This document shows positions 620-23,630 of a stretch of 64,000 bases of DNA, one piece after another. Numbering within the stretch: position 1 is the first letter of the stretch; each line of letters begins with the position of its first letter. This DNA is from Octopus sinensis (lineage: Eukaryota), in assembly GCF_006345805.1 (NCBI RefSeq), contig NC_043011.1, positions 12,722,464-12,786,463 of the forward strand. The letters run 5' to 3'. A model generated the notes under the pieces. It did no database searches, had not been told where the DNA came from, and saw only the letters and a list, made by a program, of their open reading frames with translations. The position numbers were made by a program, and so were the translations under genes.

Positions 620-3717
<3,098 letters not shown>

Positions 3718-3933
3718 GTGTGTGTATATGTTTGTGTGTCTGTGTTTGTCCTCCCAACATCGCTTGACAACCGATGCTGGTGTGTTTATGTCCCCGTCAC
3801 TTAGCGGTTCGGCAAAAGAGACCAATAGTATAAGTACTAGGCCTACAAAGAATAAGTCCTGGGGTTGATTTGCTCGACTAAAGGCGGTGCTCCAGCATGG
3901 TCACAGTCAAATGACTGAAACAACTAAAAGAGT
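3718..3933 (+). mobile_element. SINE family A, 3' half
   Basis: gtctgtgtttgtcc...gacaaccgatgctggtgtg...ggcggtgctccagcatgg...aaatgactgaaac. Confidence 0.85.
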
Positions 3934-4369
3934 AATCCAAATGTACATTTTGTAAGATAAGTTGAGATAAAATGCATTTCTTTTTGCTTCCCGACCCCAA
4001 CCAAGTTAAACTTGAATAGCTTGTAAATATAGCCGGTACATTTTAGGTGAGGACTCAAATGAATCTTGGACAGGTTCAAGCTATCAGTTATGATAGCTAC
4101 TCTGATTAATTAGCAGGGGTCAAAAAATGAAAACTTAGGTGAAAAAAATATACTTGTCAGAACTCTCAGCCCATAACAACTTAATATCATTCAGACCACA
4201 TTTTCAGTGCATATCCTGACACCTATATTTGGCTTTCTGAGAATAAATAATCTCCTCTTTTTTTTTTTTTTTTTTTCCAAATTGGGAAAACAATCTTTCT
4301 TTATGATCTTGCTGCTATGCAGGTTGCTTGTCTAAATATGCTCTAAAACTCCTATCAAAAAGAGAAGGC

Positions 4370-4692
4370 TTACATGTATGTACACATGTATGTATGTATA
4401 CATACTTACGCACACATACATTGCATGCATACATACACACTAGACATACATAATTATACATACAAACAAACATATATACATACATGCATGCATGCATACA
4501 TACATACATACATACAAACATACAAACATACATACATATACACATACATGCATACATACAAACAAACATACATACATACATGCATGCATGCATACATAAA
4601 TACAATCATACATACATACATACATACAAACATACATACAAACATACATGCATGCATGCATGCATACATACATACATACATACATACATACA

Positions 4693-4723
<31 letters not shown>

Positions 4724-4890
4724 TACATACATATATGCATGCATACATACATACATACATACATACATACAAACATACATACATACATACATACATACAT
4801 ACATACAAACATACATACATGTATTCATACATACAAGCAAATATACATATATACATACAGACAGACAGACATACTGACAGACAGACAGAG
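4370..4890. repeat. (TACA)n/(CATG) tetranucleotide microsatellite
   Basis: Direct reading of the repeat. Confidence 0.95.
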
Positions 4891-5305
4891 AAAAGAAAAA
4901 GAAAGCCTTTATGACCTTATGAGAAATTTGTAGATGCTACATCCAGACTTGCTATAACTTTAGATTTCTATAAATGATTAGTGGGGTACTTAGTTATGTA
5001 ACTAATTGGCACATTACCAATTATAAAATCTCTCACAAAACCAAAAAGAAGGCTAGGGTTAGGGGTAGAAATTACAGTTACCTGCCATTAATGGAATTGT
5101 GAAAAATATGTGAAACATTCCAGGAGTTTAGTCTGTAGTATGTACACATACCAAATACGTAACTCTACACAAATACATGAACTGATACATAGATACAAAC
5201 ACATACATGCATGCACACATACATAAATACATACATACATACATACATACATACATACATACATGCATGCATGCATGCACACATACATACATACATACAT
5301 ACATA

Positions 5306-5613
5306 GTGGAGGCACATGACCCAGTGGTTAGAGCAGCGGACTTGCGGTTGAGGAATCGTGGGTTTGAATCTCAGACCGGGCGATGTGTGTGTTTATGAGT
5401 GAAACACTTAAGCTCCACGCAGTTACGGCAGAAGGTAATGGCGAAACTTCTGCTGACTCTTTCGCCACAACTTTCTCTCACTCTTTCCTCCTGCATCTTG
5501 CAGCTCACCTGCGATGGACCAGCGTCCCGTCCAGATGGGGAACCTATATGCCATGAAGCCGGGAAACCGGCCCTTATGAGCCAGGCATGGCTCAAGAAGG
5601 AACAACCACCACC
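5306..5613 (+). mobile_element. SINE family B (tRNA-headed, ~305 bp)
   Basis: gtggaggcacatgacccagtgg...gggtttgaatc...cccttatgagccaggcatggctcaagaaggaac; same as the copies at 43745, 46514 and 52134. Confidence 0.85.
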
Positions 5614-5689
5614 ACGTACATACATACATGTAGAAGCTACTTAAAGATACTGCAAACTCTTCTTTTGATGGTAACTATTGCTATTGCAA

Positions 5690-6260
5690 TATTGGGAACC
5701 TTTTTGTATCATCAGTAGGCGTCTTAAACTCGTTTTGCCCCACAGCCTATATGCTTTACATTCACTTACTGAAGTCTTACGTCTGCAACCTCTTGGTAAC
5801 CACAACTTCCATTGTTGGCCTCATCTGACATGCATGTTTCCCAGTTGGCTTCCGTCAACATTTGAGAAATGTCAAGTCTGTCCTCCCAGAGTATTGTGAA
5901 TACAGCCATAATGACCATTTTCATAAAAGAAATATGTCTGATCAGAGCAATTCTATCAACACCTTCCCTAAAAAGATGAGTCTGTCTTTTAGATCCACTT
6001 GCCTATTCCACTCAGCAGCCTGATGCAAAATGAACAATGAGTTCCCACAGCTATTTTTGCCTTAGGTACCTTATCACCTATTATGAATTTGATAGCTTTT
6101 GGTGGGTGAGGCTTTTTGGTAACTTGTTGGGTTAGCTCTATGCAGGTCCAGCCACTTAGTAATTTCTGTAAGGACTATTTGTATCAGCCTCTCCCAGGGA
6201 ATTCCAGTCAAAATGTGGTGCAAGGTGTAGAGAGCTGCTCCACACTCTTTGTTGATACAT
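5690..6260 (-). mobile_element. Degraded non-LTR retrotransposon C-terminus with restriction-like endonuclease (Hero/NeSL-like)
   Basis: Broken translation KECGAALYTLHHILTG (CCHC knuckle-like), WNRQVDLKDRLIF and IMAVFTILWEDRLD, resembling the REL motif ELTVPWE; family inferred from memory. Confidence 0.55.
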
Positions 6261-6525
6261 GCATAGAAACTTGCATGTTTACATATATGATAGAAGCATG
6301 CATACATACACACACAAACATACATACATTCACAAGCACACACACACACAGTCATTCACACACATGATGTGAATAGACATATTCTTGACATGGTTGATTG
6401 AGATTCCAATTAATGTTATCCCCAATATTATGGCCACAACTGTTAGATATGTTGTATAACTGGTCGTTCTGATTATATATTAAAGAAACCTTTTCCTCAA
6501 GACTCATCTCAAACTTGAATATGGC

Positions 6526-6915
6526 ATGTATCAATTTGCTATAAACGATATGGCTGATAATAACATCAACAAAACTGCAGATAAACCAAAGAGAAACAAT
6601 ATTGGAAAAGGTAAACAAAATTCTGTTAGATGTAGTCACAGTAGAAACCAGAACTATAAAGTATATTTTTCTTGGAGTTATGAACCCAATAATGCTTATG
6701 TAATTGCAAAAAAGAAACGTCCCTCAGTGAATTACATGAACAGAGTGAAAGTATACAGAAACATATTTCACACAAAGCTAAATTATTTCACAACAAAGCA
6801 ATTACACCAACAAGCAACATTTGTTGAACGCAAGCAAAGAATTGCTGATTATAATTTTATTCCCCGCAGAGTGAACAGTGCACAAATAACAGAAATTAAC
6901 ATGTTTCTCAAATAA
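6526..6915 (+). mobile_element. Possible degraded N-terminal region of an R4/Dong-like non-LTR element
   Basis: SWSYEPNNAYV...PSVNYMNRV...TTKQLHQQ weakly resembles the W..EEN...Y..RM...T.Q.L..Q pattern. Confidence 0.25.
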
Positions 6916-7213
6916 ACATGCCAACACCATGTGGAGGCAAAAGACCTGACAGCAACTGTTATGATGTTGATGTGCAGTAAGACTGACCATCCACATCGAA
7001 CTGTCAGAGATTATATGTAGCAACAGCCAATGTAAGTGTATTATGAGCTGGGAGTGTGAGTAATGTAAGCAACTGAAATTTATTCCATTAAAGATTATTT
7101 CACTTTTAAAAGTACATAAGGCAGATCGTTCTTAACTAGTGTTGGTAAGAGATCTATTGAGTTATTTTGACAGTGATATTTAAGCAGAATATATTTACAA
7201 TAATGTCCCTTAA

Positions 7214-7445
7214 AGCGGCAAGCTGCCAGAATCGTTAGCACGCTGGGCGAAATGCATAGCCGTATTTCGTCTGCCGTTACGTGTTCTGGGTTCGAATTCC
7301 ACCGAGATCGACTTTGCCTTTCATCCTTTCAGGGTCGATAAATTAAGTACCAGTTACGCACTGGGGTCGATGTAATCAACTTAATCCGTTCATTTGTCTT
7401 TGTTTGTCCCCTCTATGTTTAGCCCCTTGTGGGTAGTAAAGAAAT
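7214..7445 (+). mobile_element. SINE family C
   Basis: aaagcggcaagctgccagaatcgttagc...tttgcctttcatcctt...taagtaccag...tttagccccttgtgggtagtaaagaaat. Confidence 0.85.
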
Positions 7446-7466
7446 ATATATTTACAATAATGTTCC

Positions 7467-7650
7467 TTGGCAGAAACGTTAGCATGCTGGGCAAAATGCT
7501 TAGCAGTATTTCGTCTGTCTTTATTGTCTGAGTTCAAATTCCGCCAAGGTCTACTTTGCCTTTCATCCTTTCTAGGTCGATAAATTAAGTACCAGTTGTG
7601 TACTGGAGTCAATCTAATTGACTGGCCCCCTCCTCCAAAATTTCGGGCCT
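7467..7650 (+). mobile_element. SINE family C variant, adjacent copy
   Basis: Same head and central domain as 7214-7445, different tail. Confidence 0.75.
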
Positions 7651-7689
7651 TGTGCCTAGAGCAGAGAAGAATGTCCCTTCAATTTTATA

Positions 7690-8150
7690 AATGTGTACTA
7701 TTTATATGGCTTCTCTATATCCAAACGGTCTCTTCAAGACTAAATATGGCTTTAGATTCAAACTGCTTTGATATCCCAACATATCTCTTTGTTATCACGT
7801 ACAAACCACCAAGCATCCATGGTCAAGTATCTATGTATGAGGGAAAAACCATCCTGAGAATTGGGAAGGAGCTTCTCAGATTGTATAGATTTTTATGCTG
7901 AACAAATGCGAAATAGGGATACCCCACTGAGACTATTAACTTTAGATTTATACTTGTAATTATTGAGGTACTTATTGGATCATAAGCTAATACATTCAGA
8001 GTACCAATTTGGGAGTTAGTTACCTTACAATTATTCCAAAATAACACAAAGATATAGTAACCAGTTCGAATTTCGTGAAGAGGAATTTCAATAAATCTCA
8101 AGGCAATCATGCCTAGATATATAAAAATATAAATCACTGAGGTTAATTCC
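7690..8150 (-). mobile_element. Highly degraded LINE reverse transcriptase (CR1/L2-like)
   Basis: AYDPISTSII (cf. NYRPISLTSI), SEKLLPNSQDGF (cf. LL...Q.GF), DIEKPY (cf. DF.KAFD), spread over several frames. Confidence 0.4.
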
Positions 8151-8186
8151 TCCATTTAAAACAATAATTGAGTGTAATATATTTAA

Positions 8187-8588
8187 CTAGTAGTATCGCC
8201 CAGCATTGCTCGGGTTTGTAAGGGAAATAACTATATAAGCATTTTTAGAGATGTAAAGTATAATAGCCATCTCAATATGGCTAACCACAAAGGGGGGGGG
8301 GAGGTGTTACTGTAGCTTTTTACGTTCTGAGATTTAATAATAAATTTTTAGAGAGTTACTTCCCTTATATATGCCAAAAATGCATTAAAAATGAGAAAAA
8401 TTGATGGTAAATTTTTTTTAAAATTGTAGACTCATCGTAGACGCGCACTAATACCCAGAAGGGCTCGATATGAATCACGAATATAAGATACCCGGTTTTG
8501 GTTAAACTGCACCGCAAAATGTGGGAGTAGTTAGGAATCTAAATCGTAGGAGACAGACAGCACACAACTTCTCTTTTATATATAAAGA
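8187..8588 (-). mobile_element. Non-autonomous Helitron
   Basis: On the minus strand: A|TCTTTATATATAAAA ... subterminal hairpin cccgagcaatgctggg ... CTAG|T (5' TC, 3' CTRR, inserted between A and T, no TSD). Confidence 0.75.
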
Positions 8589-8799
8589 TGTAAGAGATGT
8601 CAAATATCTAATTAGAAATACTTATGTAGTTGGGAAATGATAGCTCAATGACTAATATTCTTGCATTGCTTTTGGTGAAGACAGAAGACAAGTTCCAAAC
8701 ATAATGCAATCTCATTACACTGTTTCAGCAAAACATAGTCTTTGCCATGATTGTGAAAGTAGAGGTGAAAGAAGAATTGCAGAAAAAGAGACATATATT

Positions 8800-9140
8800 T
8801 AGGGCACGTAAAGAGACATGTATTTAGGGCACGTAAAAGGGCACCATTTGAGCGTGATCGTTACCAACGTCGCTTCACTGGCACCTGTCCCAGTGGCACT
8901 TGTAAAAAGATTCGAGTGAGGTCGTTGCCTGTACCGCCTGACTGGCCCCCGTGTACGGTAGCACGTAAAAAGCACCCACTACACTCTCGGAGTGGTTGGC
9001 GTTAGGAAGTGCATCCTGCTGTAGAAACTCTGCCAGATCAAGATTGGAGCCTGGTGCAGCCATCTGGTTCGTCAGCCCTCAGTCAAAATCGTCCAACCCA
9101 TGCTAGCATGGAAAGCGGACGTTAAACGATGATGATGATG
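8800..9140 (+). mobile_element. 5'-truncated RTE 3' UTR (family D)
   Basis: ggcacgtaaaaagcacc motifs; ends ccaacccatgctagcatggaaagcggacgttaaac(gat)n. Confidence 0.8.
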
Positions 9141-9347
9141 ATATATTGATGGAGCATTCCCTTCAAAACTTCAACTATAGACAAACACAACAGACTTGAT
9201 ATAATTACTTGAGAGAGAAAACAGAATTACATAATGTTGTGGAGTTTGGATGACCAATGGATTTGAACATTTCACTCAAAATCAAGAAAGAAAATGATTC
9301 AGAGTCAGCTGCTTTAAAATCTGTACACTTCTCTAATCAGTTTATAA

Positions 9348-9670
9348 GGATGTGTGGTTAAGAAGTTTGCTTCCCAACCACATTGTCCTGCATTCAGTCC
9401 CACTGTACAGCACCTCAGGTAAATGTCTTCTGCTTTTTCTCTGGCCAATCAAAGCCTTGTTAGTGGATTTGGTAGAAGGAAACTGAAAGAAGCCAGTCAT
9501 CATATAGATCTATGAAAAACATATCTAGTTATGGGAAAATATTATCTTGCTTGGAAACAGGTAATGATTGGTGACAGGAGTGGTAACTGGTTATAGAAAA
9601 TCTGCTTCAATAAATTCCATCTAACGAATGCATATATGGGCAAGTTGATATTAAACAAAGATGATGGTAA
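9348..9670 (+). mobile_element. Old SINE with family A head and an RTE-type tail
   Basis: Degenerate A head, followed by a tail shared with 50076-50510. Confidence 0.6.
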
Positions 9671-10847
9671 TTTGTACCTGTAATTATAGGCATTGGTTGG
9701 TTGCATTACACAGTGTCTAAATAACAGTCTGTGGTTCACAAGTGCAGAAAATGATACTTTCACTCATACTTGGAAAATTTTTGATTTTTAATAACAGAAT
9801 ATGCCAGACTTTTCTAAAATTGAACGTGCGATTCTTTACTGATGTTGTTATCTAAATTTTAATGGTGGAGATTTGTTTCTTTGTTAGAGCAATTCAAAAG
9901 AATTAGAAAGAAAAGTAACATACCTACATGCAAACAAATACATACATGTAAAGATATATATATAAATACATACACATGCATATGCACACACATACAGACA
10001 TACATGCATGTATATATACAGATACAATCACACATATATACACCATACACACACAGAGACACTCTGATATACTAATGCACAGAAATGTCTGGCATTGTCT
10101 AAAGTCATATGAGAGAAAATTTTCACTTTGTGAAAATATTCACCTGGCTTTCATTGTGTTTCAAAGGAAGAATAAAATTTAGCAATATAACTACAAACCA
10201 TACAGATATGTACAAACTAACACTGTACCTCCTTTTCTATGGCGGACATTACATTATAATCAGCAGTTGCTTCATGTATTATATTCTTATACTACATGAT
10301 GTTCTAATGAAAACAATACACAGTTCCGTCTGTGGGAATGATTGCCTTGGGAATAAATATAAACAATGCAGCTGATTAGAGAATACTCACACCTACATAA
10401 AAGATATTGATAGGACATTCCAATCTAAGTTCCCTCCAAATTCCAACATAACAAAACCATTTAAAGCCAGAAAAAAAGCACAATATTGTTGCAGAACTTA
10501 GTTGACTATCAGATGTGAATGTCTCATGAAAAGTTAGTGAAAAGGAGTCTATTTACAAATAGTTGTCTCAAAACTGTACAACTTCTATATCTTCATAATA
10601 GTTTTCTGTTTGTAAGTTGGTTATATTAATAAATAATTCCGTAATGCTCTTGGACAATTAGGATATTTAGTAAAATTTAAAATAATCAAAAAAAAGTGCT
10701 TATCAGGACGTTTGTAAAACTCAATGTGTTCAGAGAATAGTAAAATATCTTTTCAAAGTTCTTTAGTGTCATTTAAATATCACATAGCTGCAACCAGTTT
10801 CTTCCTTTTAAGGACTAAAAAGTGTGGACATATACATAGACATATAA

Positions 10848-10879
<32 letters not shown>

Positions 10880-10882
<3 letters not shown>

Positions 10883-11060
10883 GGAGAGTTTACAAAAAAA
10901 ACAAAAAACGAAGACAGGTGGTGTACAAAACAAACCGATGTATTAGTATAATGCTCAGGAATAGAAAAAGTCTTTTACATTTCGAGCCTATGCTCTTCTA
11001 CAGAAAGGGACACAGAAAAAACAAGGAGAGAAAAAATATGTGTATTGGCTAACGATCTAT
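10880..11060 (-). mobile_element. Penelope-like pLTR fragment in (TA)n
   Basis: Contains a minimal hammerhead motif (10972-11007); flanked by TA repeats. Confidence 0.55.
10972..11007 (-). ncRNA. Degenerate minimal type I hammerhead ribozyme motif
   Basis: CTTT-CTGTAGA-A-GAGC(ATAG)GCTC-GAAA-TG-TA-AAAG; stems I and II pair; core A6 is U. Confidence 0.55.
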
Positions 11061-11589
11061 CATGTATATATATATATGAATACACAAATATGCCCATATA
11101 TAAATACAGGTATATGTATACAAATTAATACAGACATACATATATAAATACAAGAATATATATAGATATGATGCTTGTGTGTATCTTCATTGTCATTTTA
11201 ACATCTACTTTTTCATGCTTGCATGGGTCAGACAGAATTTATTAAGGCAGATATTCCATGAGTGGATGCCCTTTTTGCTGCTAACCCTCACCTATTTCTG
11301 AGCTAGAGAATATTTTCCTATGGCCAGAAATATTTTCCTTGAGAACTAGAAGCAAATCATACCACTTGTATTACAGTGACGCTTGCTTACAGACAATAGC
11401 ATATAAACACCCCTTACACACACACACATGTGCTTGCACGTACACGCGCACACACACACACACAAACGGGTTTCAGTTTCTGTCCACCAAATCCACTCGC
11501 AAGACTTTGGTCAATCCAGGGCAATAATAGAAGACACTTGTCCACATGCACCAGGAGTAAACACAAAAGTATGTGTTGATATCATCATC

Positions 11590-11690
11590 ACCATCATCGT
11601 TTGATGTCCGGTTTCCATGCTAGCATGGTTTGGATGATTTGACTGAGGACTGGCAAACCAGATGGCTGCACCAGGCTCCAATCTGATCAT
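11590..11690 (-). mobile_element. RTE 3' end fragment (family D)
   Basis: catcatcgtttgatgtccggtttccatgctagcatgg... Confidence 0.7.
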
Positions 11691-12123
11691 ATATATATAT
11701 TAATCAATAAAATTCCAACTTTTGGAACTTGTCTGATTTTCATGTTTTATTATTTGCAATTTTACAATCTTATTATATTGGAATAAACTAGTACTTTCAT
11801 GTGTTATGCAATCATCAGGTTTATGTAGTGACACTTGTATACACACACAAACACACACACACACACACGTATATTTTTTTCTTTTCTTTTACTTGTTACA
11901 ACCATTGGACCATGGCTATATTAGATCACCACTTTGAGCAAATCAACATTTGTACTTACTTTCAAATCTGGTCCTTATTCTTTCGTTCGTTGAATCATAA
12001 GGGGATTTAGACAGAAATCAACCAACAATCTAATATTTTGCTAATCTCTAAACACACTGAGTTTTACAGAAGTCCTGATAGGCACTTGATTATTTTAAAT
12101 TTCACAAAAAATCCTAACATTGC

Positions 12124-12202
<79 letters not shown>

Positions 12203-12207
<5 letters not shown>

Positions 12208-12465
12208 GCAATGGCCCAGTGGTTAAGGCAGCAGTCTCACAGTCATAGAATCGCGGTTTCGATTCCCAGACCAGGCGTTGTGAGTGTTTATTGAGCGAAA
12301 AACACCTAAAGCTTGAGGAGGACTCCGGCAGGGGGTGGTGGCGATCCTTGCTGTACTCTTTCGCCACAACCTTCTCTCGCTCTTTCTTCTGTTGGCCTGC
12401 TCGCTTAGCCAGCTGGGTGGCGTCGTTTGGAAGCTAAAAAACAACGCAAAGCGCATTGTGACCCC
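12203..12465 (+). mobile_element. SINE related to family B with a different tail
   Basis: tggcccagtgg A box, gtttcgattc B box, ctctttcgccacaac shared with family B; preceded by (TA)n(GA)n. Confidence 0.75.
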
Positions 12466-12775
12466 TTCATAATGACCAATCAATATAATTGACCATTGTC
12501 CACAAGAAATTTTAGGCGCGAACCCAAGCAAATATTAAACAACTCTGGAGCCTCTTTTTTCACATATAAGAGAGAGCAAACCCAACATAAAGTCAGATAA
12601 GAAGAAAAAAATCTATCAGAAAGGAACTCTAATCTTTTGATAAGCATAACAAATGCGCAACCGGTAAAAAGAACTATCACCTAATTAAATTACTTAAATT
12701 ACTTAAATTATTTTGTCAGCATTTTCTTCATTTCCTTTTTTATATATCACAACTCGTGTTCCACATCTCCTTTTT

Positions 12776-12822
<47 letters not shown>

Positions 12823-12829
12823 TCTTTTA

Positions 12830-12982
12830 TTTTTTTCAATCATTTAACTGCAGCCAGGACTTATTCTTTGTAAGCCTAGTACTTATTCTATCAGTCTCTT
12901 TTTGCCAAACCACTAAGTTACAGTGATGTAAACACACCAACATTGGCTGTCAAGCAATGGGGCAGGGACAAACACAGACACA

Positions 12983-13030
<48 letters not shown>

Positions 13031-13215
13031 CAAACACACAAACACACACACACACGGGCTTCTTTCAGCTTCCATCTACCAAATCCACTCACAAGGCTTT
13101 GATCACCCTGAGACTATAGTAGAAGACACTTGCCCAAGGTGCCACACAGTGGAACTGAAACTAGAGCCATGTGTTTGGTAAGCAACCTACTCAACACACA
13201 GTCATGCCTGCACAT
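12830..13215 (-). mobile_element. SINE family A
   Basis: Reverse complement of head-(TG)n linker-tail. Confidence 0.8.
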
Positions 13216-13240
13216 ATATATATATTATATATAATGCACC

Positions 13241-13294
<54 letters not shown>

Positions 13295-13794
13295 TAATAT
13301 ATTAGGTTGTCAAGTATGAAATTTGTAGAGAAGAAAAAAGTTTGCCAATATTTTTAAATGCAAGGAATAGTTTTATTCATCAAAATATGCACCCATATTG
13401 TCAAAACACTTTTGTCATTTTAGTGGTAGCTTGTCCAGCCCAGAATTGTAAAAGCCTGGCAATATATGTGGTCAGGAAGTTTGCTTTGCAACCACATGGT
13501 TTTGGGTTCAGTCTCACTATGCAGCACTTTGAGCAAGTGTCTTCTAGCATAGCCCTAGGCTATGCTACCTTGTAAGTGAATTTTGTTGATGGAAACTGTG
13601 TGGAGGCCCATTATATATATTAAATCGTCAAGTATGAAATTTGTAGTAAGATAAACTTTGTACTACAAATTTGTTGAAATTTGTAGTAAGATAAACTTTG
13701 ACAGCTGCTCATTTTGCATCATTATTATTATTTTTTGACCATCTTTATTTTCTGTTAGAAAGCTGACACATCTATTTCTTTATTCTAACTCATT

Positions 13795-14035
13795 TTGCAC
13801 TGCTTGACTGACCAGTTTATAGAGCACCTCTGAGACATCAGACTTAGCAATGACACCCAGGTCTTGTGCCATTTCCGCTCTGCCGGTCATTTGCTACAAC
13901 ATCTGTTTGTGTTCGGACTGTCTTTGCACAGGGGCCATCCGGATTCACGCCTTCACTGTGAACAGGTATTTATCTTCTCACTTCATTCCCTTGCACCACA
14001 TGGGCTCAACTCACCTCTGCTCTTCAGCTGACACC
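13795..14035 (+). mobile_element. Penelope-like GIY-YIG endonuclease C-terminal relic
   Basis: FIEHL*DIRLSNDTQVLCHFRSAGH...CEQVFIFSLHSLAPHGLN matches the PLE pattern F.EHL.DIR....PVA.HF....H...EQ..IF.L..L.P.GLN. Confidence 0.7.
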
Positions 14036-14189
14036 AAGATCACCTCCTCTCTTCATTTGATACAAACCTCATATATATATATACACATACACACACACAC
14101 ACACACATATACTAGGCTTACAAAGAATAAGTCCTGGCTGCAGTTAAATGATTGAAACAAATAAAAGAATAAATATATATATATATATA

Positions 14190-14545
14190 GGTGCAGGCAT
14201 GGTTGTGTGGTAGGAAGCTTGCTTCCCAACTGCATGGTTCCAGGTTCAGTCCTACTGCATAGCATCTTGGGCAAGTGTCTTCTTGTGAGTGAATTTGGTA
14301 AATGGAAACCGAATGAAGCTCATACTATATATGTATGTATACATATATACATATGTGTGTGTGTGGGTGTGTGTGTGTGTGTTTGTCTCCCCCACACCAC
14401 TTGACAACCAGTGTTGCTGTATTTATGTCCCGATAACATAGCAGTTCAGCAAAAGAGTGTGATGGAATAACTACCAGGCTTTAAAAAATAAGCACTGGGG
14501 TTGATACATTTGACTAGAGCAAGGTGGTGCCTCAGCATGGGACAC
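14190..14545 (+). mobile_element. SINE family A (diverged)
   Basis: Head, (TA)(TG) linker and tail. Confidence 0.8.
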
Positions 14546-14579
14546 ATATATATAAAAGATAGATATAAAATATGTAGCT

Positions 14580-14863
14580 GATGCCAGTGCCACCTGACTG
14601 GTACCCATGCTAGTGGCACATAAAAAGCACCTTATGAGCATGGCCAATGCCAGTGCCAGCTCACTGGCTCCTGTACCAGTGGCACATAAAAAGTGCCCAC
14701 TACACTCTTGGAGTGGTTGGCATTTGGAAGGGCATCCAGCTGTAGAGACCTTGCCAAATCAGATTGGAGCCTGGTGCAGCCTCCTGGTTTGCCAGTTCTC
14801 AATCAAACTGTCTAACTCTTGCTAGCATGGAAAGCAGACGTTAAATGACAATGATGATGATGA

Positions 14864-14866
<3 letters not shown>
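14580..14866 (+). mobile_element. RTE 3' UTR (family D)
   Basis: ...ggaagggcatccagctgtagag...gctagcatggaaagcagacgttaaatgac(aat/gat)n. Confidence 0.8.
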
Positions 14867-14904
<38 letters not shown>

Positions 14905-15364
14905 AAAATGTTTTTTAGCTAATTCTGGAAGAAAATCGGCAATTTATTTATTTAGTGCTGATTGAGTTGCGCATCTGCGTGGTAAATTCGAAAAATTAGC
15001 ACCAAAACTATAACCATATCATACTTCAAAGCAATCACTGTTATCATGAAACCCCTAGGATTTTATGATCCTTCATCTAGAAAATAGCTTAAGAAGGACT
15101 CCCTAACACTGGATTCCTCAGTTTGCTCCACTCACCTGCTCAGGTCAAACCTCGAGCAAAGCAGCATAGGAATATCTACCCTGGATGAATTTGTACTGCA
15201 ACAGAAACAACCAAATAGACATAAATGCTGCATGAAAGGACATTAGGACACCTATGCAGCAGGAATATGTGTCAGATTGGAATCTAATGTGAATTTAATG
15301 AGATTGATATTGTAATAGACATAGTTTGAAGATGTATAATTCTACGTTCTTCTTTATGATGTCT

Positions 15365-15688
15365 TCATATATATAGATACATATATATATTATTGTTTTG
15401 TTATTTAATCCTAAAAAATACATATATATATGTATATATATGTGTATATATATACATATATGTGTGTGTATATATATAATATTTATATTATTATATACAT
15501 ATACATACATATATATACATATCATATACATACACACATATATATATATATATATAATATTTATATTATTATATACATATACATACATATATTTACATAT
15601 CATATACATACATATATATATACATATATATGTATGTATATATTTAAATAAAATATATATATGTATATATATAAATAATGTATATATA

Positions 15689-15768
<80 letters not shown>

Positions 15769-15775
15769 TGCATAT
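15365..15775. repeat. Complex TA/TACA/TG microsatellite
   Basis: Direct reading; includes an internal ~80-bp duplication. Confidence 0.9.
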
Positions 15776-16113
15776 ATGGGTACAGGATGTTACCAACTAT
15801 GTAAACAATGTGAAATATGAAAGCAAACGAGTTAAATATGCAAACAACGAGAACAAAATAATTGCAAACAGGACAAGTAAACACAGAGAAACGACCCTTC
15901 ATCAGTTTTTGGTTGCCTATCTACTCCTCATTTCGAGCATTCAATGACAATATGAGTCTTGAAAGACAGTTGCTCCCATAAATTCTAAAATAGAATTTGG
16001 GATTTATGGAGGGTCAAAGTTGGGAATGAAAACAAGACACTGGAGACGTACAAGGAAACTAAATGAAAACAAACATTGCAGGTCGTTAGACGAGAACAAG
16101 AGGAAATCTATAT

Positions 16114-16154
<41 letters not shown>

Positions 16155-16366
16155 TATATATATATATGTATATATATGCATGTATGTGTCTGTATATATA
16201 TATATATATATATATTTAGTATATGAATGTATGTGTGTGTGTTTGTATATACATATATATATATCATCATCATCATCATGCTATATATATATATACCGGA
16301 GTAAACACATAAATGTGAAACAAGGTGGAAAGAAAAGTACTCAAATACCAGTGGTAGAGTAATATG

Positions 16367-16425
16367 CTTTATTTTAAGCAGCAGAAAATTCAACAATTGT
16401 TGAATTTTCTGCTGCTTAAAATAAA

Positions 16426-16426
<1 letters not shown>
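16367..16426. repeat. Perfect 60-bp palindrome with no spacer
   Basis: ctttattttaagcagcagaaaattcaacaa|ttgttgaattttctgctgcttaaaataaag. Confidence 0.95.
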
Positions 16427-16485
<59 letters not shown>

Positions 16486-16765
16486 GAAATGGATAAATGA
16501 ATTATCTTGTTACGGATTATTCAAAATTTAACCGATACCTGTGTAGCAAAAATCACACCAGAAAAGACACGGTTGAGGTTACGACCATGTGTAGAAAATA
16601 ATATAAAGGAATTTTGTAAAATCTTCGTTCGGTTCCATTTCTTCCCTTCACTATATATATATATATATATACATACAAACACACACACATATATTCACAT
16701 ACTATATATATATATTTATATATATATATATATATATACAAATACACACACATACATTCATATAC

Positions 16766-16797
<32 letters not shown>

Positions 16798-17236
16798 GAC
16801 ACAGACACATACATGCATATATATATATATATACATATATACATACATATATGTACACAATATATATGTATATAAATATCTATATACTCAAACATACATA
16901 CATGGTATATACACACAGTCATATACGATGGGCTTCTTTTCAGTTTCTGTGTACCAAATTCAGTTACAAGGTTTTGGTCAATGTGTGGCTACAGCAGAAG
17001 ATACTTGCCTAAGGTGTTGCTCCGTGAGACTGAAACCACATGGCTGGGAAGCAAGTTTCTTTAACAACATAGCCATGTCTGCACCCACCCATAATCTAGT
17101 ATTGTCAGCGAATTGTTTTGGTGTTTCAAGTTTTGGCCACACACACACACACACACAATGTACTTAGTTCTGTAATAATAAGCAGTTTCACCTGAATGTG
17201 GAGATGGACTGAATGCAAGAGATCATCTCTCTCTCT

Positions 17237-17605
17237 TTTACTCTTTTACTTGTTTCAGTCATTTGACTGCGGCCATGCTGGAGCACCGCCTTTAGTCGAG
17301 CAAATTGACCCCGGGACTTATTCTTTGTAAGCCCAGTACTTATTCTATCGGTCTCTTTTGCCGAACCGCTAAGTTACGGGGACATAAACACACCAGCATT
17401 GGTGGTCAAGCAATGCTAGGGGGACAAACACAGACACACAAACATATACATACACATACATATATATATATACATATATATGACGGGCTTCTTTCAGTTT
17501 CTGTCTACCAAATCCACTCACAAGGCTTTGGTCAGCCCAAGGTTATAGTAGAAGACACTTGCCCAAGGTGCCACACAGTGGGACTGAACCCGGAACCATG
17601 TGGTT
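17237..17605 (-). mobile_element. SINE family A
   Basis: Reverse complement, head truncated; followed by a SINE C tail fragment. Confidence 0.85.
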
Positions 17606-18025
17606 GGTATCTCCTCTGTGTTTAGCCCCTTGTGGGTAGTAAAGAAATAAGTATTCAGTAAGTGAACATTGAAGAGTAGATGAAACAGGGAGAACAGGGG
17701 GAAATGGTCAAAGAATATTGCTGAGTGATGATTTAACGGGCAGTAATATTTATTTTGGAATATGAGTGGTGAGTGTCAGTAGTGGAACAGTATTCCAGTG
17801 TAAAAATGATCAGAGTTCAAGTATTTTGTGGACCTAATAAAAGAAATACAGTTTTTGTGGTGCCACGTTTGTTCAGCGTAAATGTCATATAAGATCATCA
17901 GAGAGAGAGTAAGGCCAAGAATTAGAAGAGAGTATGATGAGTATAGCTTTGTGTGTGTGAGTTCATACATGTTCACATATACCTACACACACATACTGGC
18001 TCATACTCGATAAAAAAATTCATCA

Positions 18026-18189
18026 AGGCGCAGGAGTGGCTGTGTGGTAAGTAGCTTGCTTACAAACGACATGGTTCTGGGTTCAGTCCCACTGCGTGGC
18101 ACCTTAGGCAAGTGTCTTTTACTATAGCCTCGTGCTGGCCAAAGCCTTGTGAGTGGATTTGGTAGACGGAAATTAAAAGAAGCCCGTCG

Positions 18190-18231
<42 letters not shown>

Positions 18232-18443
18232 CATATGTATGTGTGTGTATGTGTTTCTCCCTTTGACTTGCTTGACAACCGATGCTGGTGTGTTTACGTC
18301 ACCGTCACTTAGCGGTTCGGCAAAAGAGACCGATAGAATAAGTACTAGACTTACAAAAGAATAAGTCTTGGGGTCGATTTGCTCGACTAAAGGCGGGGCT
18401 CCAGCATGGCCGCAGTCAAATGACTGAAACAAGTAAAAGAATA
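18026..18443 (+). mobile_element. SINE family A, full length
   Basis: aggcgcaggagtggctgtgtggtaag...aatgactgaaacaagtaaaagaata. Confidence 0.9.
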
Positions 18444-18749
18444 ATAAATTGCAAACTATGGATCTAAAACTAAAATGAATTTAAAGAATATTAAATTAGT
18501 ATAAATTTAAAAGAAAATTCATGGAAAATTAATGTACAAGGAATATGCAAATAATAATCTGTTTTCTGAAATAGTTTCACAACTTACTCATGTATTACGG
18601 TCAATTCAATAAGGCAGTTGATGATAAAACTTTCAGTGCAACACATAGCAACTCAGTGTATCACCAGCTAAAGTACAAACCATTACTAAGGAAGGATTGA
18701 CAGAAACTTAACAAGAAAATAGACTAAAGACTTTATAATAAGCCAGTAG

Positions 18750-19287
18750 GGATCTTTTCGGTTTGAACAGCAGTTTTTTTCTAGCGGTGTCATATGAAAT
18801 TGTCACCCATGATTATGACCCTAGTATCGATCTATTGCATTTCAATCTGTTTTAGGGTTGGGGTTAGGGTTAGGGGTGGGGGAAAGGGTACAGTTTTTTT
18901 CTAGTGGTGTCATATGAAATTGTCACCCATCATTATGACCCTAGTATCGATCTATTGCATTTCAATCTGTTTTAGGGTTAGGGTTAGGGGAAAGGGAAAG
19001 GGTATCTTTTTTTCTTCACAAATGTAAATAAACCCAATCTGTTTCTTAAACAAGGGACATATTCATACGGCACAGAATGTTTTTTAACTCAATAGACATC
19101 ATTGATTGGTTGAAATTGCAGAAATTGAAGAAAAAAAACCAACAAATATCTTACAAACTATAGAATTTTCTATAGTTTGTAAGAGAAAAAGATGTTTTAT
19201 AAACACATTCTACCAGTATACGAAGTTTAAAATTTTTTAGTTACCTAGAAATTATGTTAAAAACTGCCGTTCAAACCGAAAAGATCT
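18750..19287 (+). mobile_element. MITE with ~30-bp TIRs and 8-bp TSD (Merlin- or hAT-like), carrying TTAGGG repeats and an internal 120-bp duplication
   Basis: TIR ggatcttttcggtttgaacagcagtttt / aaaactgccgttcaaaccgaaaagatct; TSD gccagtag at 18742-18749 and 19288-19295. Confidence 0.9.
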
Positions 19288-19349
19288 GCCAGTAGTATAG
19301 GAGGTCATCATTTTATAAGGATATCTAACCAGTTTATCTTTTTAAACTT

Positions 19350-19859
19350 CTCTTGAGGAATATTGCAGGAGAATATGGCCTGCTTGTGGTGCAGCTTGTT
19401 CTAGCAATAAATCTCTTATCATTAGTATATATAATATATATATACATAAATACATACATATAAATATATATATATATATATTAGTGGATATATGCTTGGG
19501 TCCAAAATGGCAAGCAAAATCAATTTTCTCCATAGCTTATTTGTTGAAGACCTGGAAATCTATGCCAAAAACATCAATGTAGCCAATTGAGCTATCTACA
19601 ACCAATTCACATAATATTAGAATGGAATTCAGCTGTAACAAATGTTCATAAGAGTAATTGAGGAAGGACTACAAGCCATGAAGGAATATCTGAAAGCCTA
19701 TGGACTTTCCATAATCTTTGTTCTCAATAATGAAATATATAGAAATAAGTGGGAACACACAAGACTATATTTCATCATTGACATCATCATCATCATCATC
19801 ATCATCGTCATCATCATGATCATCATCATGATCATCATCATCATCATCATCATCATGAT

Positions 19860-19892
<33 letters not shown>

Positions 19893-21150
19893 CATCACCA
19901 TCATCGTCGTCGTCGTCGTCGTCATCATCATCATCGTCATCATCATCATCATCGTCATCGTCATCATCGTCATCATCATCATTGACACCATCATCATTGA
20001 CACCATCATCATTATCATCATTGCCATGACTACCATCACTGCTGCTGCCAACACCACCATTACTATCATCATCATCATCATCATCAACATTACAACCACC
20101 TCCTCCATCATCATCATCATCATCATAATTTTTACATACATCATTTCCTAAGCCGGCATGAGTTAGATTATTATTATACAACCAATTACTCAATCAATAA
20201 ATAAATAGTTACCATACTAAGCAAAACAGTAACCAAAGCTTTCCTTTTACAAAAAGACCCTGTTCTCCAAATGCATTTAATATCAGTATTCAGCCTGCTC
20301 GAGTGGACAATAAAGGATATGTTCAAATGGTGGATTCTGATATCAAAAGATTCTAACATCAATTGGAAACTTACATGGAAATAATGACAGACTATTTCAG
20401 AAGAAAATAATGAGAAAAGGCTTCATACCAATCATGATAGTTTTGAGTGCCATATGGTATTATTTGGATATCACCAGTTAAGCAACAAGGTGGGAGAGAA
20501 TCAATGCAATGAGGAGGTGTTTGAAAACGAGAGAATCATATAGAAGTTAGGAGTAAATTCCTAAAAATGCACTCAAAGTATAATGATGTGCTATTCAACC
20601 AGAGAACTGCTAAACATATCTGTTTTTATTGAGATTTAGAAGAGAAATGCATAGCACCAACCAAAAATAGATGTATATTCTATAAGCTGGACAGTTTGTT
20701 TCTGTCTTCAAATTGGTTTAGCTAGTCACCTTTTGTAAGCTTTGGTTTTAAATTCAAGAACAAGAGGTAGTTAGAAAATTTATTATTAATGAAAGACAGA
20801 ATGATTAAAACCTGAATGCATCTAATATTAAAAAGAAATTCTCACAACAGCATGTTTGTTATGGAAATCATAACATATAAAATAACATTATTTTCTGAAC
20901 CCTAGGGAGCTTTTATAAGAATCACTGCTTTATGACTACTTTCAAATGTCAAGCAGCCGGAAGACAAATTTCATTTGCATAGAATTCTCAGAAGAGCTGA
21001 TATCTATTCCCAACAACTAGAAGAACTGAAAGACAAATACACAAATGTCCAAATGTACAAAAAAAAAAACCTGCAATGAATTTGAACTCAAGACTTTAAA
21101 ACTAGTTATCTAACGCTATATATATATTCAGCTGCTCTAGTTCTACACTC
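19350..21150 (+). mobile_element. Degraded R4/Dong-like non-LTR retrotransposon, interrupted by (ATC)n
   Basis: RGILQ (cf. RGIFQGD), FLHSLFVEDLEIYAKN...SHNIRMEFSCNKC (cf. HLLFMDDLKLYAKN...S.DIGMEFG..KC), LLEWT, LTSIGNLHGNNDRLF. Confidence 0.5.
19772..20128. repeat. (ATC)n/(GTC)n trinucleotide repeat
   Basis: Direct reading; explains the poly-Ile, poly-Met and poly-Asp ORFs. Confidence 0.95.
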
Positions 21151-22145
21151 AGTGAACATCATCTAACTATGGGACCAAATTAAGTGTATCATACATGTGT
21201 GTGGTGGGGAGTGGGGAGAAAGAGAGAGACTACATGCAATGCGCTCTGTAGAAAATATAGTCCTGAAGTTTCAAAAATATGTCCGATATGGAATATATCA
21301 GGAACTTTCAATACAAAGTCATTTGTAGAACATTCCTATAATACAAAATTAAATTCCATAAACCTAAATAAATATCTAAAGAAGTAGAACTCTTGGGAAT
21401 GTCAGATGTCCTGCAGATGTAAACTTCTCAATCAACGCCACCAAAAAGAATTATGGATAGTTAGTTAACAATATACAACTACAATAACTGGATTATAGTT
21501 TCATATTTATACTTATAATTATAGGTACAGTTTTGGGGACAAGGATGAAGTGATGTACTTCAAATATATTCTCTAAAGTCAATTTGTGACAGGATATATA
21601 AAAAAATGCAACATTTTTCTAAGTTCAACATGCGGCTCTATATAGTTATTGTTGTTTAAATAAACAAGTAAAAAGCATTTTTTCTCAAGCAGATACACAC
21701 ACACATACACATGTATACACAGACACACACACACATACATACATACTCGCATGCTTAGACACACACATCATAATACAGACTTACACCCATACGCATACAC
21801 AGGCGCACATTCCTACATTTAATTATTTCTGCATGTACATATATGCAACATGCAAAGAAATGCAACTGCTACAAAGTACAGCAAACTCCTAGTAAGACAT
21901 CATGGGTTCAATTCTTACTTTACTTGTGCTACTATTAAATGTCAAGCATGATCAATAACTTAGAGAGTTGTGGGACCAACTAGAGTGCCTTGCTCTCCTC
22001 CTCACAATGGATGACAATAAGATTTTAATGGTGACCCAGCAGCTTGTTTGTAGCTGTTGATTGAACTTTACATAGAATATATTTTTAGAAATTACTATAT
22101 ATAACAATGCATACATACTGTTTCAGAAAGATAATTTTTACAAAT

Positions 22146-22200
<55 letters not shown>

Positions 22201-22515
22201 TATATATATGTATATATATGAATGTACATATGTGTATAGATATGTGTGTATGTATGTGTGTGCATGGGTAAAGGTACATACTTCCATTTACCTGTGCATA
22301 TTCTTTGTGTAATCTCTAAAAGTATGTAGGAATCAATGTCTATGAGTAATACACAGTGATCAGAATGTCCCTTTAACATTTCAATTTTATATATTATTCA
22401 AATTTAAATGCTGAAGGGACTTCTGAATGATCTTGTATATTTGTGTGTTGTATATGTCTATAGATATGCGGGCATTTATTATATACAGCATTATGCATAC
22501 ATACTACATACATGA

Positions 22516-22553
<38 letters not shown>

Positions 22554-23039
22554 ATTCTCACACACAGACACACACACACACACAACCATACAAATATGCA
22601 GAATGGGAGAAATGTTGAGGAACAAGATATTTGTAAAATAAAAACAAACTATGAATAAATGAAAGCTTCAATTTTTCTCCTTTATTATGTTGGTATATTG
22701 TTAGGGTCTGTCATTCTGGTAGCGGCAGGCATATATAGGGTCCTTTGTTATAGTGGTGATGGTGATGCATGGATTGGAGTGTTTCGCTGTGTCAGTGGGG
22801 GAGGGGTGAATCTTATAGGGGTCTTTGTCATTCAGGTGATGTATATAATAAGCAGGGGTCTTCGTTGTGGTGTTATTTATGTAATAGGATGAAAGTGGGA
22901 GATGTAATGTTTGTAAATGAAAGTAAACAATGCTGGAGTAAGGTGTGACAGTGGCATTTAGACCTCGGCTGCATGCTGATGCACTGTCAAGTGATAATTT
23001 GGAAGCTTGCACTTAGCAGCAGGCATCTTTGGAAGGAGA

Positions 23040-23187
23040 CAGAATGGAAAAGGGAGAGTGATGAAGAAGGAAAAGGGGAGAAAGGAAGAGAGAATGGAAA
23101 GGGAAGCGAGAGAGAGAGAGAAAATGGAAAGGGGAGCGAGGAAGAGAGAGAGAGAGGAAGAAAGAAAAGAGGAACAAAGAGAGGGTA

Positions 23188-23221
<34 letters not shown>

Positions 23222-23222
23222 T
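23040..23222. repeat. Polypurine (GA/GAA) tract
   Basis: Direct reading; lies in the intron just downstream of the exon as a polypyrimidine stretch on the sense strand. Confidence 0.9.
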
Positions 23223-23306
23223 GTAGCTATAACATAGTATACTTGTATGATATTGCAAAAGCATGGTATCTTCAGAAAAGTGATCGATGAAGAGGAAAAA
23301 ACTTAC

Positions 23307-23398
23307 CAAATCCAGGAATGTCTTCTTCGGGCACTCAAGGACTCGTTACCTGGCACGGATAACATAGCTGTCCGTAGAGGCATTTTTGGTTGGGCCAT
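23307..23398 (-). CDS. PDE4: Alternative first coding exon of a cAMP-specific phosphodiesterase 4 (dunce), PDE4D3/PDE4B4-like N-terminus
   Basis: ATG at 23398 (also in-frame ATGs at 23383 and 23365) with an in-frame TAA upstream. Encodes MAQPKMPLRTAMLSVPGNESLSARRRHSWI+TG, then a consensus donor TG|GTAAGT. RRHSWIC followed by a phase-2 intron matches the recalled PDE4D3 MMHVNNFPFRRHSWIC|FDVDNG. I did not find downstream exons in the window. Confidence 0.75.
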
Positions 23399-23541
23399 TG
23401 ATAGTAAATCCTCTTAGAAATCAGGGGTTGGGGAGGGGGAGTTGAATAATTACTATTTGTGCATGAAAAAAAACCACCTAATCTCAGTGAAATTCTGAAA
23501 TATGAGTAGTGGTCTAGTTTTGTGCAGGCAATCAATGCTCG

Positions 23542-23630
23542 GCAGCAGCAGCAGCAGTGGTAGTGGCAGCAGCAGCAGCAGCAACAGCAGCAGTAACAGC
23601 AGCACTAACAACAGTAGCTGCAGCAGTAGT
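23542..23630. repeat. Interrupted (CAG/CTG)n tract
   Basis: gcagcagcagcagcagtggtagtggcagcagc... Confidence 0.9.

What the first reader, a model, noticed from the sequence alone, without database searches (positions are those of the whole stretch)
23307..23398. Invertebrate PDE4 first exon carrying the vertebrate PDE4D3/PDE4B4 'RRHSWIC' PKA-site N-terminus
Seen in the sequence: a minus-strand ORF closed upstream by an in-frame stop, ending ...RRRHSWI-TG at a consensus GTAAGT donor (phase 2). Established knowledge, recalled: long PDE4 isoforms use alternative first exons that splice in phase 2 onto the common FDV(D/E)NG exon; PDE4D3 (MMHVNNFPFRRHSWIC) and PDE4B4 end in this same heptapeptide, and its Ser is the PKA site (Ser13 in D3) linked to mAKAP binding. 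Inference: this isoform-specific regulatory exon predates the protostome/deuterostome split. The motif, the splice phase and the completing Cys codon all agree. At 92 nt behind an intron of at least 23 kb, it is easily missed by annotation.
Basis: partly seen in the sequence, partly recalled or inferred. Interest (0 to 1): 0.85.

Follow-up and report, generated by a model that had tools for sequence, protein, structure and literature searches.

The report
Octopus PDE4 first exon, already annotated
The 92-base stretch is a real alternative first coding exon of the octopus cAMP phosphodiesterase PDE4 gene, carrying the same RRHSWIC protein-kinase-A motif as human PDE4D3; public annotation already includes it, and many other invertebrates have the same exon.

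Summary
On the minus strand, 23398..23307 reads ATG…MAQPKMPLRTAMLSVPGNESLSARRRHSWI + TG, followed by GTAAGT. An in-frame TAA lies 15 nt upstream.

The 30 residues match 30/30 the N-terminus of two RefSeq models: XP_014768220.1 (Octopus bimaculoides PDE4 isoform X4) and XP_036365376.1 (O. sinensis isoform X5). Both continue …WIC-FDVENG into UCR1, UCR2 and the catalytic domain.

The same module, Φ-L-x-V-P…(R/K)RRHSWIC directly before FDVENG, occurs in Mytilus, Limulus, a copepod, hemipteran, beetle and wasp PDE4s, amphioxus, fish, frogs, birds and mammals. In Limulus genomic DNA the exon ends in the same splice phase, 22 kb upstream of the exon that starts T-TTT-GAC-GTG. A bivalve transcript contig shows the junction spliced.

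An origin before the protostome/deuterostome split is therefore well supported. PKA phosphorylation of Ser28 and any binding partner in octopus are untested.

The exon itself is already known at database level. I found no paper stating the deep conservation, and one 2010 analysis says the PDE4D3 exon is conserved mainly in mammals. Interest is modest.

The parts
23307..23398 (-). Coding part of an alternative first coding exon of the octopus PDE4 gene: MAQPKMPLRTAMLSVPGNESLSARRRHSWI plus the first two bases (TG) of a Cys codon. There are three in-frame ATGs (M1, M6, M12); M12 (MLSVP...) aligns with the start of the Mytilus-type isoform (MLTVP...).
   Evidence: sequence. (30/30 identity to P0247 = XP_014768220.1). 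(identical N-terminus in XP_036365376.1, O. sinensis). (alignment). (the bivalve start codon is preceded by an in-frame stop).
23312..23326 (-). RRHSW core: a PKA consensus R-R-x-S-hydrophobic, with the Ser28 codon TCC at 23317-23315. It is equivalent to Ser13 of mammalian PDE4D3.
   Evidence: motif scan. (R25, R26, H27, S28, W29 and C31 invariant in 12 sequences from 4 phyla). (PDE4D3 residues 1-14 are MMHVNNFPFRRHSW; PKA phosphorylates Ser-13 and Ser-54).
23301..23306 (-). 5' splice donor GTAAGT. The exon ends after the second base of a codon (phase 2).
   Evidence: (the motif-plus-donor pattern is unique in the window and absent from 100 shuffles). (the Limulus homologue ends ...TGT GG|GTGAGT, and its common exon starts cag|T TTT GAC GTG).
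23414..23416 (-). In-frame TAA, 15 nt upstream of the first ATG. It lies inside a pyrimidine-rich tract ending ...tttctaAG|AG (about 23445-23411) that could be a 3' splice site, so the 5' end of the exon is undefined: it may be a true first exon or follow an untranslated leader exon.
   Evidence: sequence only; no transcript data available.
1..23300 (-). The part of the downstream intron that lies in the window. It contains no PDE4 coding exon and is rich in microsatellites.
   Evidence: no PDE4 matches. (repeats). (the O. sinensis PDE4 gene spans about 732 kb).

Best explanation
This is the PDE4D3/PDE4B4-type alternative first coding exon of the single octopus PDE4 gene. Transcription from an upstream start, not mapped here, produces an mRNA in which this exon is spliced through its GTAAGT donor, in phase 2, across an intron of at least 23 kb. 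The acceptor is the common exon that begins T/C-TTT-GAT-GTN-GAR-AAY-GG. The resulting long isoform is 694 aa, starts MAQPK...RRRHSWIC-FDVENG, and carries UCR1, UCR2 and the catalytic domain.

Shown here: the sequence, the donor and its phase, identity to two RefSeq isoform models, and homology to the same exon in other phyla.

Inferred: the roughly 20-residue module (hydrophobic-L-x-V-P, a 3-8 residue spacer, (R/K)RRHSWIC) acts as it does in mammalian PDE4D3. That is, it serves as an isoform-specific targeting peptide whose Ser (Ser28 here) is a PKA site, so that cAMP/PKA changes which scaffold the enzyme sits on. The separately conserved QRRESF site in UCR1 controls catalytic activation.
For: - Sequence and donor.
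- tblastn of XP_014768220.1 against the window gives 30/30 identity.
- Members of the P0150 cluster include O. bimaculoides isoform X4, which begins with exactly this peptide followed by CFDVENG.
- I predicted the O. sinensis isoform by joining the window peptide to the O. sinensis common sequence. It exists verbatim as XP_036365376.1.
- P0247 has the Pfam domains PDE4_UCR (4.9e-47) and PDEase_I (6e-96).
- Of the 254 retrieved PDE4 sequences, 67 carry R[RK]HS[WF] directly before FDVxNG. They include Mytilus, Limulus, Lepeophtheirus, Clastoptera, Bemisia, Sitophilus, Tribolium, Leptinotarsa, Dendroctonus, Microctonus, Branchiostoma, many fish, frogs and birds.
- In the 12-sequence alignment R25, R26, H27, S28, W29 and C31 are invariant, and an upstream L-x-V(P) is shared.
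- Limulus genomic locus L001: the exon ends in phase 2, a 22-kb intron follows, and the common exon starts T TTT GAC GTG.
- The intronless 2.46-kb bivalve contig L002 has the junction spliced, and its last 20 exon bases (AGAAGACATTCCTGGATTTG) are identical to octopus.
- The O. sinensis PDE4 gene spans 732 kb, which fits a 64-kb window holding a single exon.
- PKA phosphorylates PDE4D3 at Ser-13 and Ser-54 in the mAKAP complex (PMC11941749).
Against: - No octopus transcript or splice-junction read could be examined. The octopus support consists of RefSeq 'PREDICTED' models.
- The downstream PDE4 exons lie outside the window, so physical linkage is inferred from the annotated isoform rather than seen.
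- Which of the three ATGs is used, and where the exon starts, are unknown.
- Phosphorylation and partner binding are extrapolated from mammals. To my knowledge mAKAP/AKAP6 has been described only in vertebrates, so the partner in octopus cannot simply be assumed.
Confidence: 0.93

Rival explanations
1. It is a chance open reading frame or decayed pseudo-exon in intergenic or intronic DNA that merely resembles the PDE4D3 N-terminus and is not used.
For: The ORF is only 31 codons long and sits in repeat-rich DNA with no other coding sequence for tens of kb. I saw no octopus transcript data.
Against: The motif-plus-donor pattern occurs in none of 100 shuffles. The peptide is identical over 31 residues in the annotated isoforms of two Octopus species. 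It shares the extended L-x-V-P...RRRHSWIC module, its position and its splice phase with other phyla. It shares 20/20 nt with a spliced bivalve transcript.
Confidence: 0.03
2. The exon is real, but the RRHSW(I/M)C motif arose convergently in protostomes and deuterostomes. It would be a short linear PKA motif re-invented next to the same exon, not an inherited isoform exon.
For: The motif is short. Many unrelated PDE4 N-termini also end in basic RRxS/T strings just before FDVENG, for example RRHTLANVR, RRRTTGS and RRNSDF, which shows a general pressure for basic/PKA-like sequence at this position. The sampled Drosophila representatives lack the RRHSWIC type.
Against: H, W, I and C are not needed for a PKA site, yet they are invariant or nearly so. 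The upstream hydrophobic L-x-V-P element and its spacing are shared. The exon position and phase 2 are the same in Limulus and octopus. Amphioxus bridges to vertebrates with RRRHSWIC-FDVENG.
Confidence: 0.05
3. The exon is an internal exon, not the first. An upstream exon would splice into the AG at about 23413/23411 and might add coding sequence, so the true N-terminus would be longer than MAQPK....
For: A good pyrimidine tract plus AG lies immediately upstream of the ATG, and the in-frame TAA would fall in the intron if that site were used. Arthropod versions have 25-45 extra residues N-terminal to the module.
Against: Both RefSeq models start at MAQPK. The bivalve transcript starts at the equivalent of M12, with an in-frame stop upstream and 283 nt of 5' UTR.
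Confidence: 0.15

Closest known systems
Mammalian PDE4D3 unique N-terminal exon (MMHVNNFPFRRHSWIC-FDVDNG; PKA site Ser13)
   Same: It has the same heptapeptide RRHSWIC and the same position directly before the FDV(D/E)NG exon. It has a similar M-(L/M)-x-V start about 10 residues upstream. Its product is also a long isoform with UCR1, UCR2 and the catalytic domain.
   Different: The octopus exon is longer: 31 versus 16 residues, with two extra upstream ATGs and a longer spacer. It has RRR rather than FRR. There is a single PDE4 gene rather than four paralogues. Phosphorylation and mAKAP/AKAP9 binding are shown only in mammals.
Vertebrate PDE4B4-type N-terminus (MLNVNAACSRRHSWIC-FDVENG in birds; ...MLHVSDLLLPRRHSWIC in a bear 4B-like model)
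   Same: It has the same motif and junction, the FDVENG (Glu) form of the common exon as in octopus, and an M-L-x-V start (P0004, P0005, P0159).
   Different: It belongs to a paralogue-specific vertebrate gene. The octopus spacer is longer.
Mytilus PDE4 isoform MLTVPTIQEPKRRHSWIC-FDVENG (P0002, P0122)
   Same: This is the closest relative found. MLTVP aligns with octopus M12-LSVP, the junction is the same, and the last 20 exon nucleotides are identical. A full-length spliced transcript exists.
   Different: The bivalve isoform starts at the residue equivalent to octopus M12. The spacer is 6 residues against 8.
Arthropod PDE4/dunce isoforms with ...LLVP...RRRHSWIC(G/S)-FDVENG (Limulus, copepod, Hemiptera, Coleoptera, Hymenoptera)
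   Same: They have the same module and the same splice phase 2, seen in Limulus genomic DNA, and a long intron before the common exon.
   Different: The Cys codon lies wholly in the exon and one more residue (G or S) is formed at the junction. The N-terminal extensions are 25-60 residues long.

Membership tests
PDE4 long-isoform alternative 5' coding exon, PDE4D3/PDE4B4 type | The exon belongs to a PDE4 gene: it is on the same strand and upstream of the UCR1/UCR2/catalytic exons. | tested here: met
   The peptide is 30/30 identical to the N-terminus of RefSeq PDE4 isoforms of O. bimaculoides and O. sinensis. The product has PDE4_UCR and PDEase_I domains. The downstream exons themselves lie outside the window, so linkage rests on the annotation.
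PDE4 long-isoform alternative 5' coding exon, PDE4D3/PDE4B4 type | It splices in phase 2 onto the common exon encoding FDV(D/E)NG, and the split codon gives Cys. | tested here: met
   The window reads ATT TG|GTAAGT. The annotated proteins read WIC-FDVENG. The Limulus common exon begins T TTT GAC GTG after a phase-2 donor. The bivalve cDNA reads ATT TGT TTT GAT GTG.
PDE4 long-isoform alternative 5' coding exon, PDE4D3/PDE4B4 type | An RRHSWIC motif lies at the C-terminal end of the unique region. | tested here: met
PDE4 long-isoform alternative 5' coding exon, PDE4D3/PDE4B4 type | The exon is transcribed and the junction is used in the organism itself. | not testable with these tools
   No octopus RNA-seq or cDNA was accessible. 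The only support is RefSeq predicted isoforms in two species, plus a spliced transcript in a bivalve.
PDE4 long-isoform alternative 5' coding exon, PDE4D3/PDE4B4 type | It is a true first exon with its own promoter. | tested here: inconclusive
   An in-frame stop lies upstream, but a plausible 3' splice site also lies 12-15 nt upstream of the ATG. No transcription-start data were available.
PKA-regulated scaffold-docking N-terminus (PDE4D3 Ser13 / mAKAP) | PKA phosphorylates the Ser of RRHS. | not testable with these tools
   Only the consensus R-R-x-S-hydrophobic is present. The mammalian data come from the literature.
PKA-regulated scaffold-docking N-terminus (PDE4D3 Ser13 / mAKAP) | It binds an AKAP (mAKAP/AKAP6, AKAP9) through the unique N-terminus. 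| not tested
   I did not search for octopus AKAP orthologues. The partner is unknown.

The most novel reading that the evidence does not exclude
The roughly 20-residue module hydrophobic-L-x-V-P...(R/K)RRHSWIC is a pan-bilaterian, PKA-gated docking peptide of PDE4 that predates the vertebrate scaffold mAKAP. Its ancestral partner would still be unidentified and could be found in invertebrate models. This would overturn the published view that the PDE4D3 N-terminal exon is conserved mainly in mammals and that such exons arose by recent sequence drift (PMC2929239). A second N-terminal type, RRHTLANVR, appears equally ancient.
Probability: 0.5. Interest if true: 0.45.

Novelty: already known. 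Interest (0 to 1): 0.3.

Why it matters
For this window, the result places an otherwise featureless 64 kb of repeats inside the 5' part of the very large octopus PDE4 gene, which spans about 0.7 Mb in O. sinensis. The exon is not new: RefSeq models in two Octopus species contain it.

The wider point is modest but real. The PDE4D3 N-terminus is the best-studied targeting peptide in compartmentalised cAMP signalling (mAKAP, ryanodine receptor, Ser13). It is not a mammalian invention. It is an ancient exon with invariant R-R-H-S-W-x-C found from molluscs and arthropods to humans. The one evolutionary study I could read says the opposite, and I found no paper stating the deep conservation. That gives PDE4 researchers a reason to look for a partner older than mAKAP and to test the phospho-switch in tractable invertebrates.

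Tried and rejected
1. A protein search with the 42-aa peptide found nothing. This turned out to be uninformative, for two reasons. The tool seems to list only proteins about 0.75-1.75 times the query length. The database also holds only 90%-cluster representatives, so short isoforms are hidden under longer ones.

2. Exact-sequence look-ups failed for the 31-aa ORF, a LINE-like ORF, Mytilus P0002, octopus P0150 and P0247. Only the longest product of each gene is on record.

3. The Elysia and O. sinensis PDE4 loci span more than 100 kb, so no DNA was returned. I therefore could not compare the octopus exon at DNA level between species, nor decide whether the window is O. bimaculoides or O. sinensis.

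4. A profile search of the 50%-identity representative library returned 677 UCR1-containing proteins but no further RRHSW N-termini. Representatives hide isoforms, so this says nothing about cnidarians or sponges.

5. Literature searches for RRHSW, PDE4+octopus and PDE4B4+PDE4D3, plus a partial look at the Aplysia PDE4 work, found no statement of the deep conservation. A search for HSWIC returned only unrelated text. The Aplysia targeting paper PMC4162181 is not held.

6. Pfam found nothing in the other window ORFs.

7. I considered chance, convergence and an internal-exon reading. These are covered under the rival explanations.

Full report
**1. What is in the sequence**

On the minus strand an ATG at 23398 opens the frame MAQPKMPLRTAMLSVPGNESLSARRRHSWI. 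The Ile codon is at 23311-23309. It is followed by TG (23308-23307) and GTAAGT (23306-23301).

Read without splicing, the frame ends TGG-TAA. Spliced at TG|GT, the exon ends after the second base of a codon, and a following T or C would make Cys. An in-frame TAA lies 15 nt upstream of the ATG (23416-23414).

The degenerate pattern for RRHSWI+TG+GTRAGT occurs once in the window and in none of 100 dinucleotide-preserving shuffles.

No other PDE4 motif occurs in any frame of the window: FDVxNG, RRESF, YRSDSD and the catalytic signatures are all absent. No other part of the octopus PDE4 proteins matches it. The rest of the window is microsatellites, tandem repeats and short degenerate ORFs.

**2. 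What it is**

The first protein search, with the peptide alone, found nothing. A second search used the peptide joined to a generic UCR1, the upstream conserved region 1 of PDE4. It showed that annotated invertebrate PDE4 fragments already carry the motif directly in front of FDVENG:
- Mytilus galloprovincialis: MLTVPTIQEPKRRHSWIC-FDVENG
- Limulus: ...FLTLPVPRRRHSWICG-FDVDDG
- a marine transcriptome sequence: ...YLQVPTTTTRRRHSWICG-FDVENG

All hits were 92-209 aa long. The tool apparently filters by length relative to the query, so I padded the query with X to 598 residues. That let full-length PDE4s through, including the Octopus sinensis PDE4 cluster P0150, which has 27 members.

Listing that cluster and reading its members gave the decisive result. 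XP_014768220.1, 'cAMP-specific 3',5'-cyclic phosphodiesterase 4C isoform X4 [Octopus bimaculoides]' (694 aa), begins MAQPKMPLRTAMLSVPGNESLSARRRHSWIC-FDVENGQAPGRSPLE.... That is the window peptide, the predicted Cys and the common exon. tblastn of this protein on the window gives 30/30 identity at 23398-23309.

I then built the expected O. sinensis isoform by joining the window peptide to the O. sinensis common sequence and looked it up by exact sequence. It exists as XP_036365376.1, isoform X5.

The product carries PDE4_UCR and PDEase_I domains. The O. sinensis PDE4 gene spans about 732 kb. That explains why a 64-kb window holds just one 92-nt coding exon.

The other octopus N-termini are not in this window:
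- MAQYLSTISNHG...AKS
- MSQAEIGTISELHLHRMNRNRRHTLANVR
- the short-form start MENPNYSK...

**3. How old it is**

Among the 254 PDE4 sequences retrieved, 67 have R[RK]HS[WF] immediately before FDVxNG. They come from:
- molluscs: Octopus, Mytilus
- a chelicerate: Limulus
- a copepod: Lepeophtheirus
- Hemiptera: Clastoptera, Bemisia
- Coleoptera: Sitophilus, Tribolium, Leptinotarsa, Dendroctonus
- a hymenopteran: Microctonus
- amphioxus: MVPIQGSHGCVRRRHSWIC-FDVENG
- many teleosts, frogs (MMHVNNFPFRRHSWIC, identical over its first 14 residues to human PDE4D3 residues 1-14 as quoted in PMC2173774), birds and mammals of both the 4D and 4B types

In an alignment of twelve representatives, R25, R26, H27, S28, W29 and C31 are invariant. 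A hydrophobic-L-x-V(-P) element lies 3-8 residues upstream in all of them. In octopus this is M12-L-S-V-P, matching the Mytilus start M-L-T-V-P.

Gene structure agrees. In Limulus genomic DNA the exon ends ...CAC TCT TGG ATA TGT GG|GTGAGT. A 22-kb intron follows, and the common exon starts cag|T TTT GAC GTG.

A 2,456-nt intronless bivalve contig encodes the complete 646-aa enzyme, with the junction spliced as ATT TGT TTT GAT GTG and an in-frame stop in its 5' UTR. Its last 20 exon nucleotides, AGAAGACATTCCTGGATTTG, are identical to the octopus exon.

Homology, rather than convergence, is therefore the better reading. The exon most likely predates the protostome/deuterostome split.

**4. How it most likely works**

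Shown:
- It is an alternative 5' coding exon with a consensus donor.
- Annotated models join it to the common PDE4 exons.
- It encodes a basic R-R-x-S-hydrophobic site.

Inferred from mammalian PDE4D3: PKA phosphorylates Ser-13 and Ser-54 in the mAKAP complex (PMC11941749). By analogy, the unique N-terminus would be a targeting peptide. Ser28 phosphorylation would change scaffold binding, while the QRRESF site in UCR1, also present in octopus, would control activation.

The partner in octopus is unknown. I did not look for AKAP orthologues.

The 5' end of the exon is also open. A pyrimidine tract ending in AG lies 12-15 nt upstream of the ATG, so a leader exon may splice in. Three in-frame ATGs are available.

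**5. Comparison with what is known, and novelty**

The exon is annotated in RefSeq for two Octopus species. The cross-phylum conservation is visible to anyone who compares the public models.

I found no paper that states it. The one evolutionary analysis I could read concludes that conservation of most PDE4D long-form 5' exons, the PDE4D3 exon among them, is found primarily in mammals, and that such exons arose by sequence drift (PMC2929239). The data here contradict that: fish, amphioxus and protostomes all have the exon. This is a small correction to the literature, not a new kind of feature.

**6. Limits**

- I had no octopus transcript data.
- No octopus DNA outside the window was available, because both loci exceeded the tool's size limit.
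- I cannot say whether the window is O. bimaculoides or O. sinensis.
- There is no information on non-bilaterians; the representative-library search was uninformative.

**Verdict**

Interest is about 0.3.

Noticed in passing
related proteins P0251, P0254, P0124, P0141, P0027, P0225, P0206 (not in the window): There is a second deeply conserved PDE4 N-terminal type ending RRHTLANVR directly before FDVENG. It occurs in Octopus, bivalves, Limulus and Drosophila virilis. Amphioxus has PRRHTMHC and vertebrates have RRRFTVAHTC at the same position. At least two alternative N-terminal exons therefore look pan-bilaterian.
   Followed up: partly
window 23307-23326 (minus) and L002 around 315-334: The last 20 nucleotides of the exon (AGAAGACATTCCTGGATTTG) are identical in octopus and in a bivalve transcript, including synonymous positions. 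Limulus uses different codons. This may be chance or may reflect constraint on the RNA near the donor.
   Followed up: no
window 23545-23640: A GCT/CTG-rich trinucleotide run, read on the minus strand, lies about 150-240 nt upstream of the exon's ATG, in what would be the 5' UTR or promoter.
   Followed up: no
window 52047-52119 (+): A tRNA-Glu(CTC) is called by ARAGORN and by Rfam (46 bits, above the gathering score), with a TTTT run about 10 nt downstream. It is followed at about 52135 by a second tRNA-like head. This could be a real tRNA gene or a tRNA-derived SINE cluster.
   Followed up: partly
window 616-3717: A 3.1-kb imperfect (AT)n microsatellite (about 1,580 copies) lowers GC to 12-17%.
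   Followed up: no
window 53241-53401 and 54215-54438: Two related arrays of a 67-bp tandem repeat (CTGTGCCGGTGGCACGTAAAAAGCACC...) lie about 1 kb apart. The long ORFs across them have no Pfam match.
   Followed up: no
window 18771-18989: A 120-bp unit, present in 1.8 copies, contains four telomere-like TTAGGG repeats.
   Followed up: no
window 45325-45669 and 46131-46523 (minus): Two ORFs resemble the C-terminal ends of non-LTR retrotransposon proteins by eye. They have no Pfam hit and no exact match in the gene collection.
   Followed up: partly
tool behaviour: the search for homologous proteins listed only proteins about 0.75-1.75 times the query length. Padding the query with X to 598 residues brought in full-length PDE4s. 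Isoforms are hidden under 90%-cluster representatives and had to be recovered with the listing of cluster members.
   Followed up: yes
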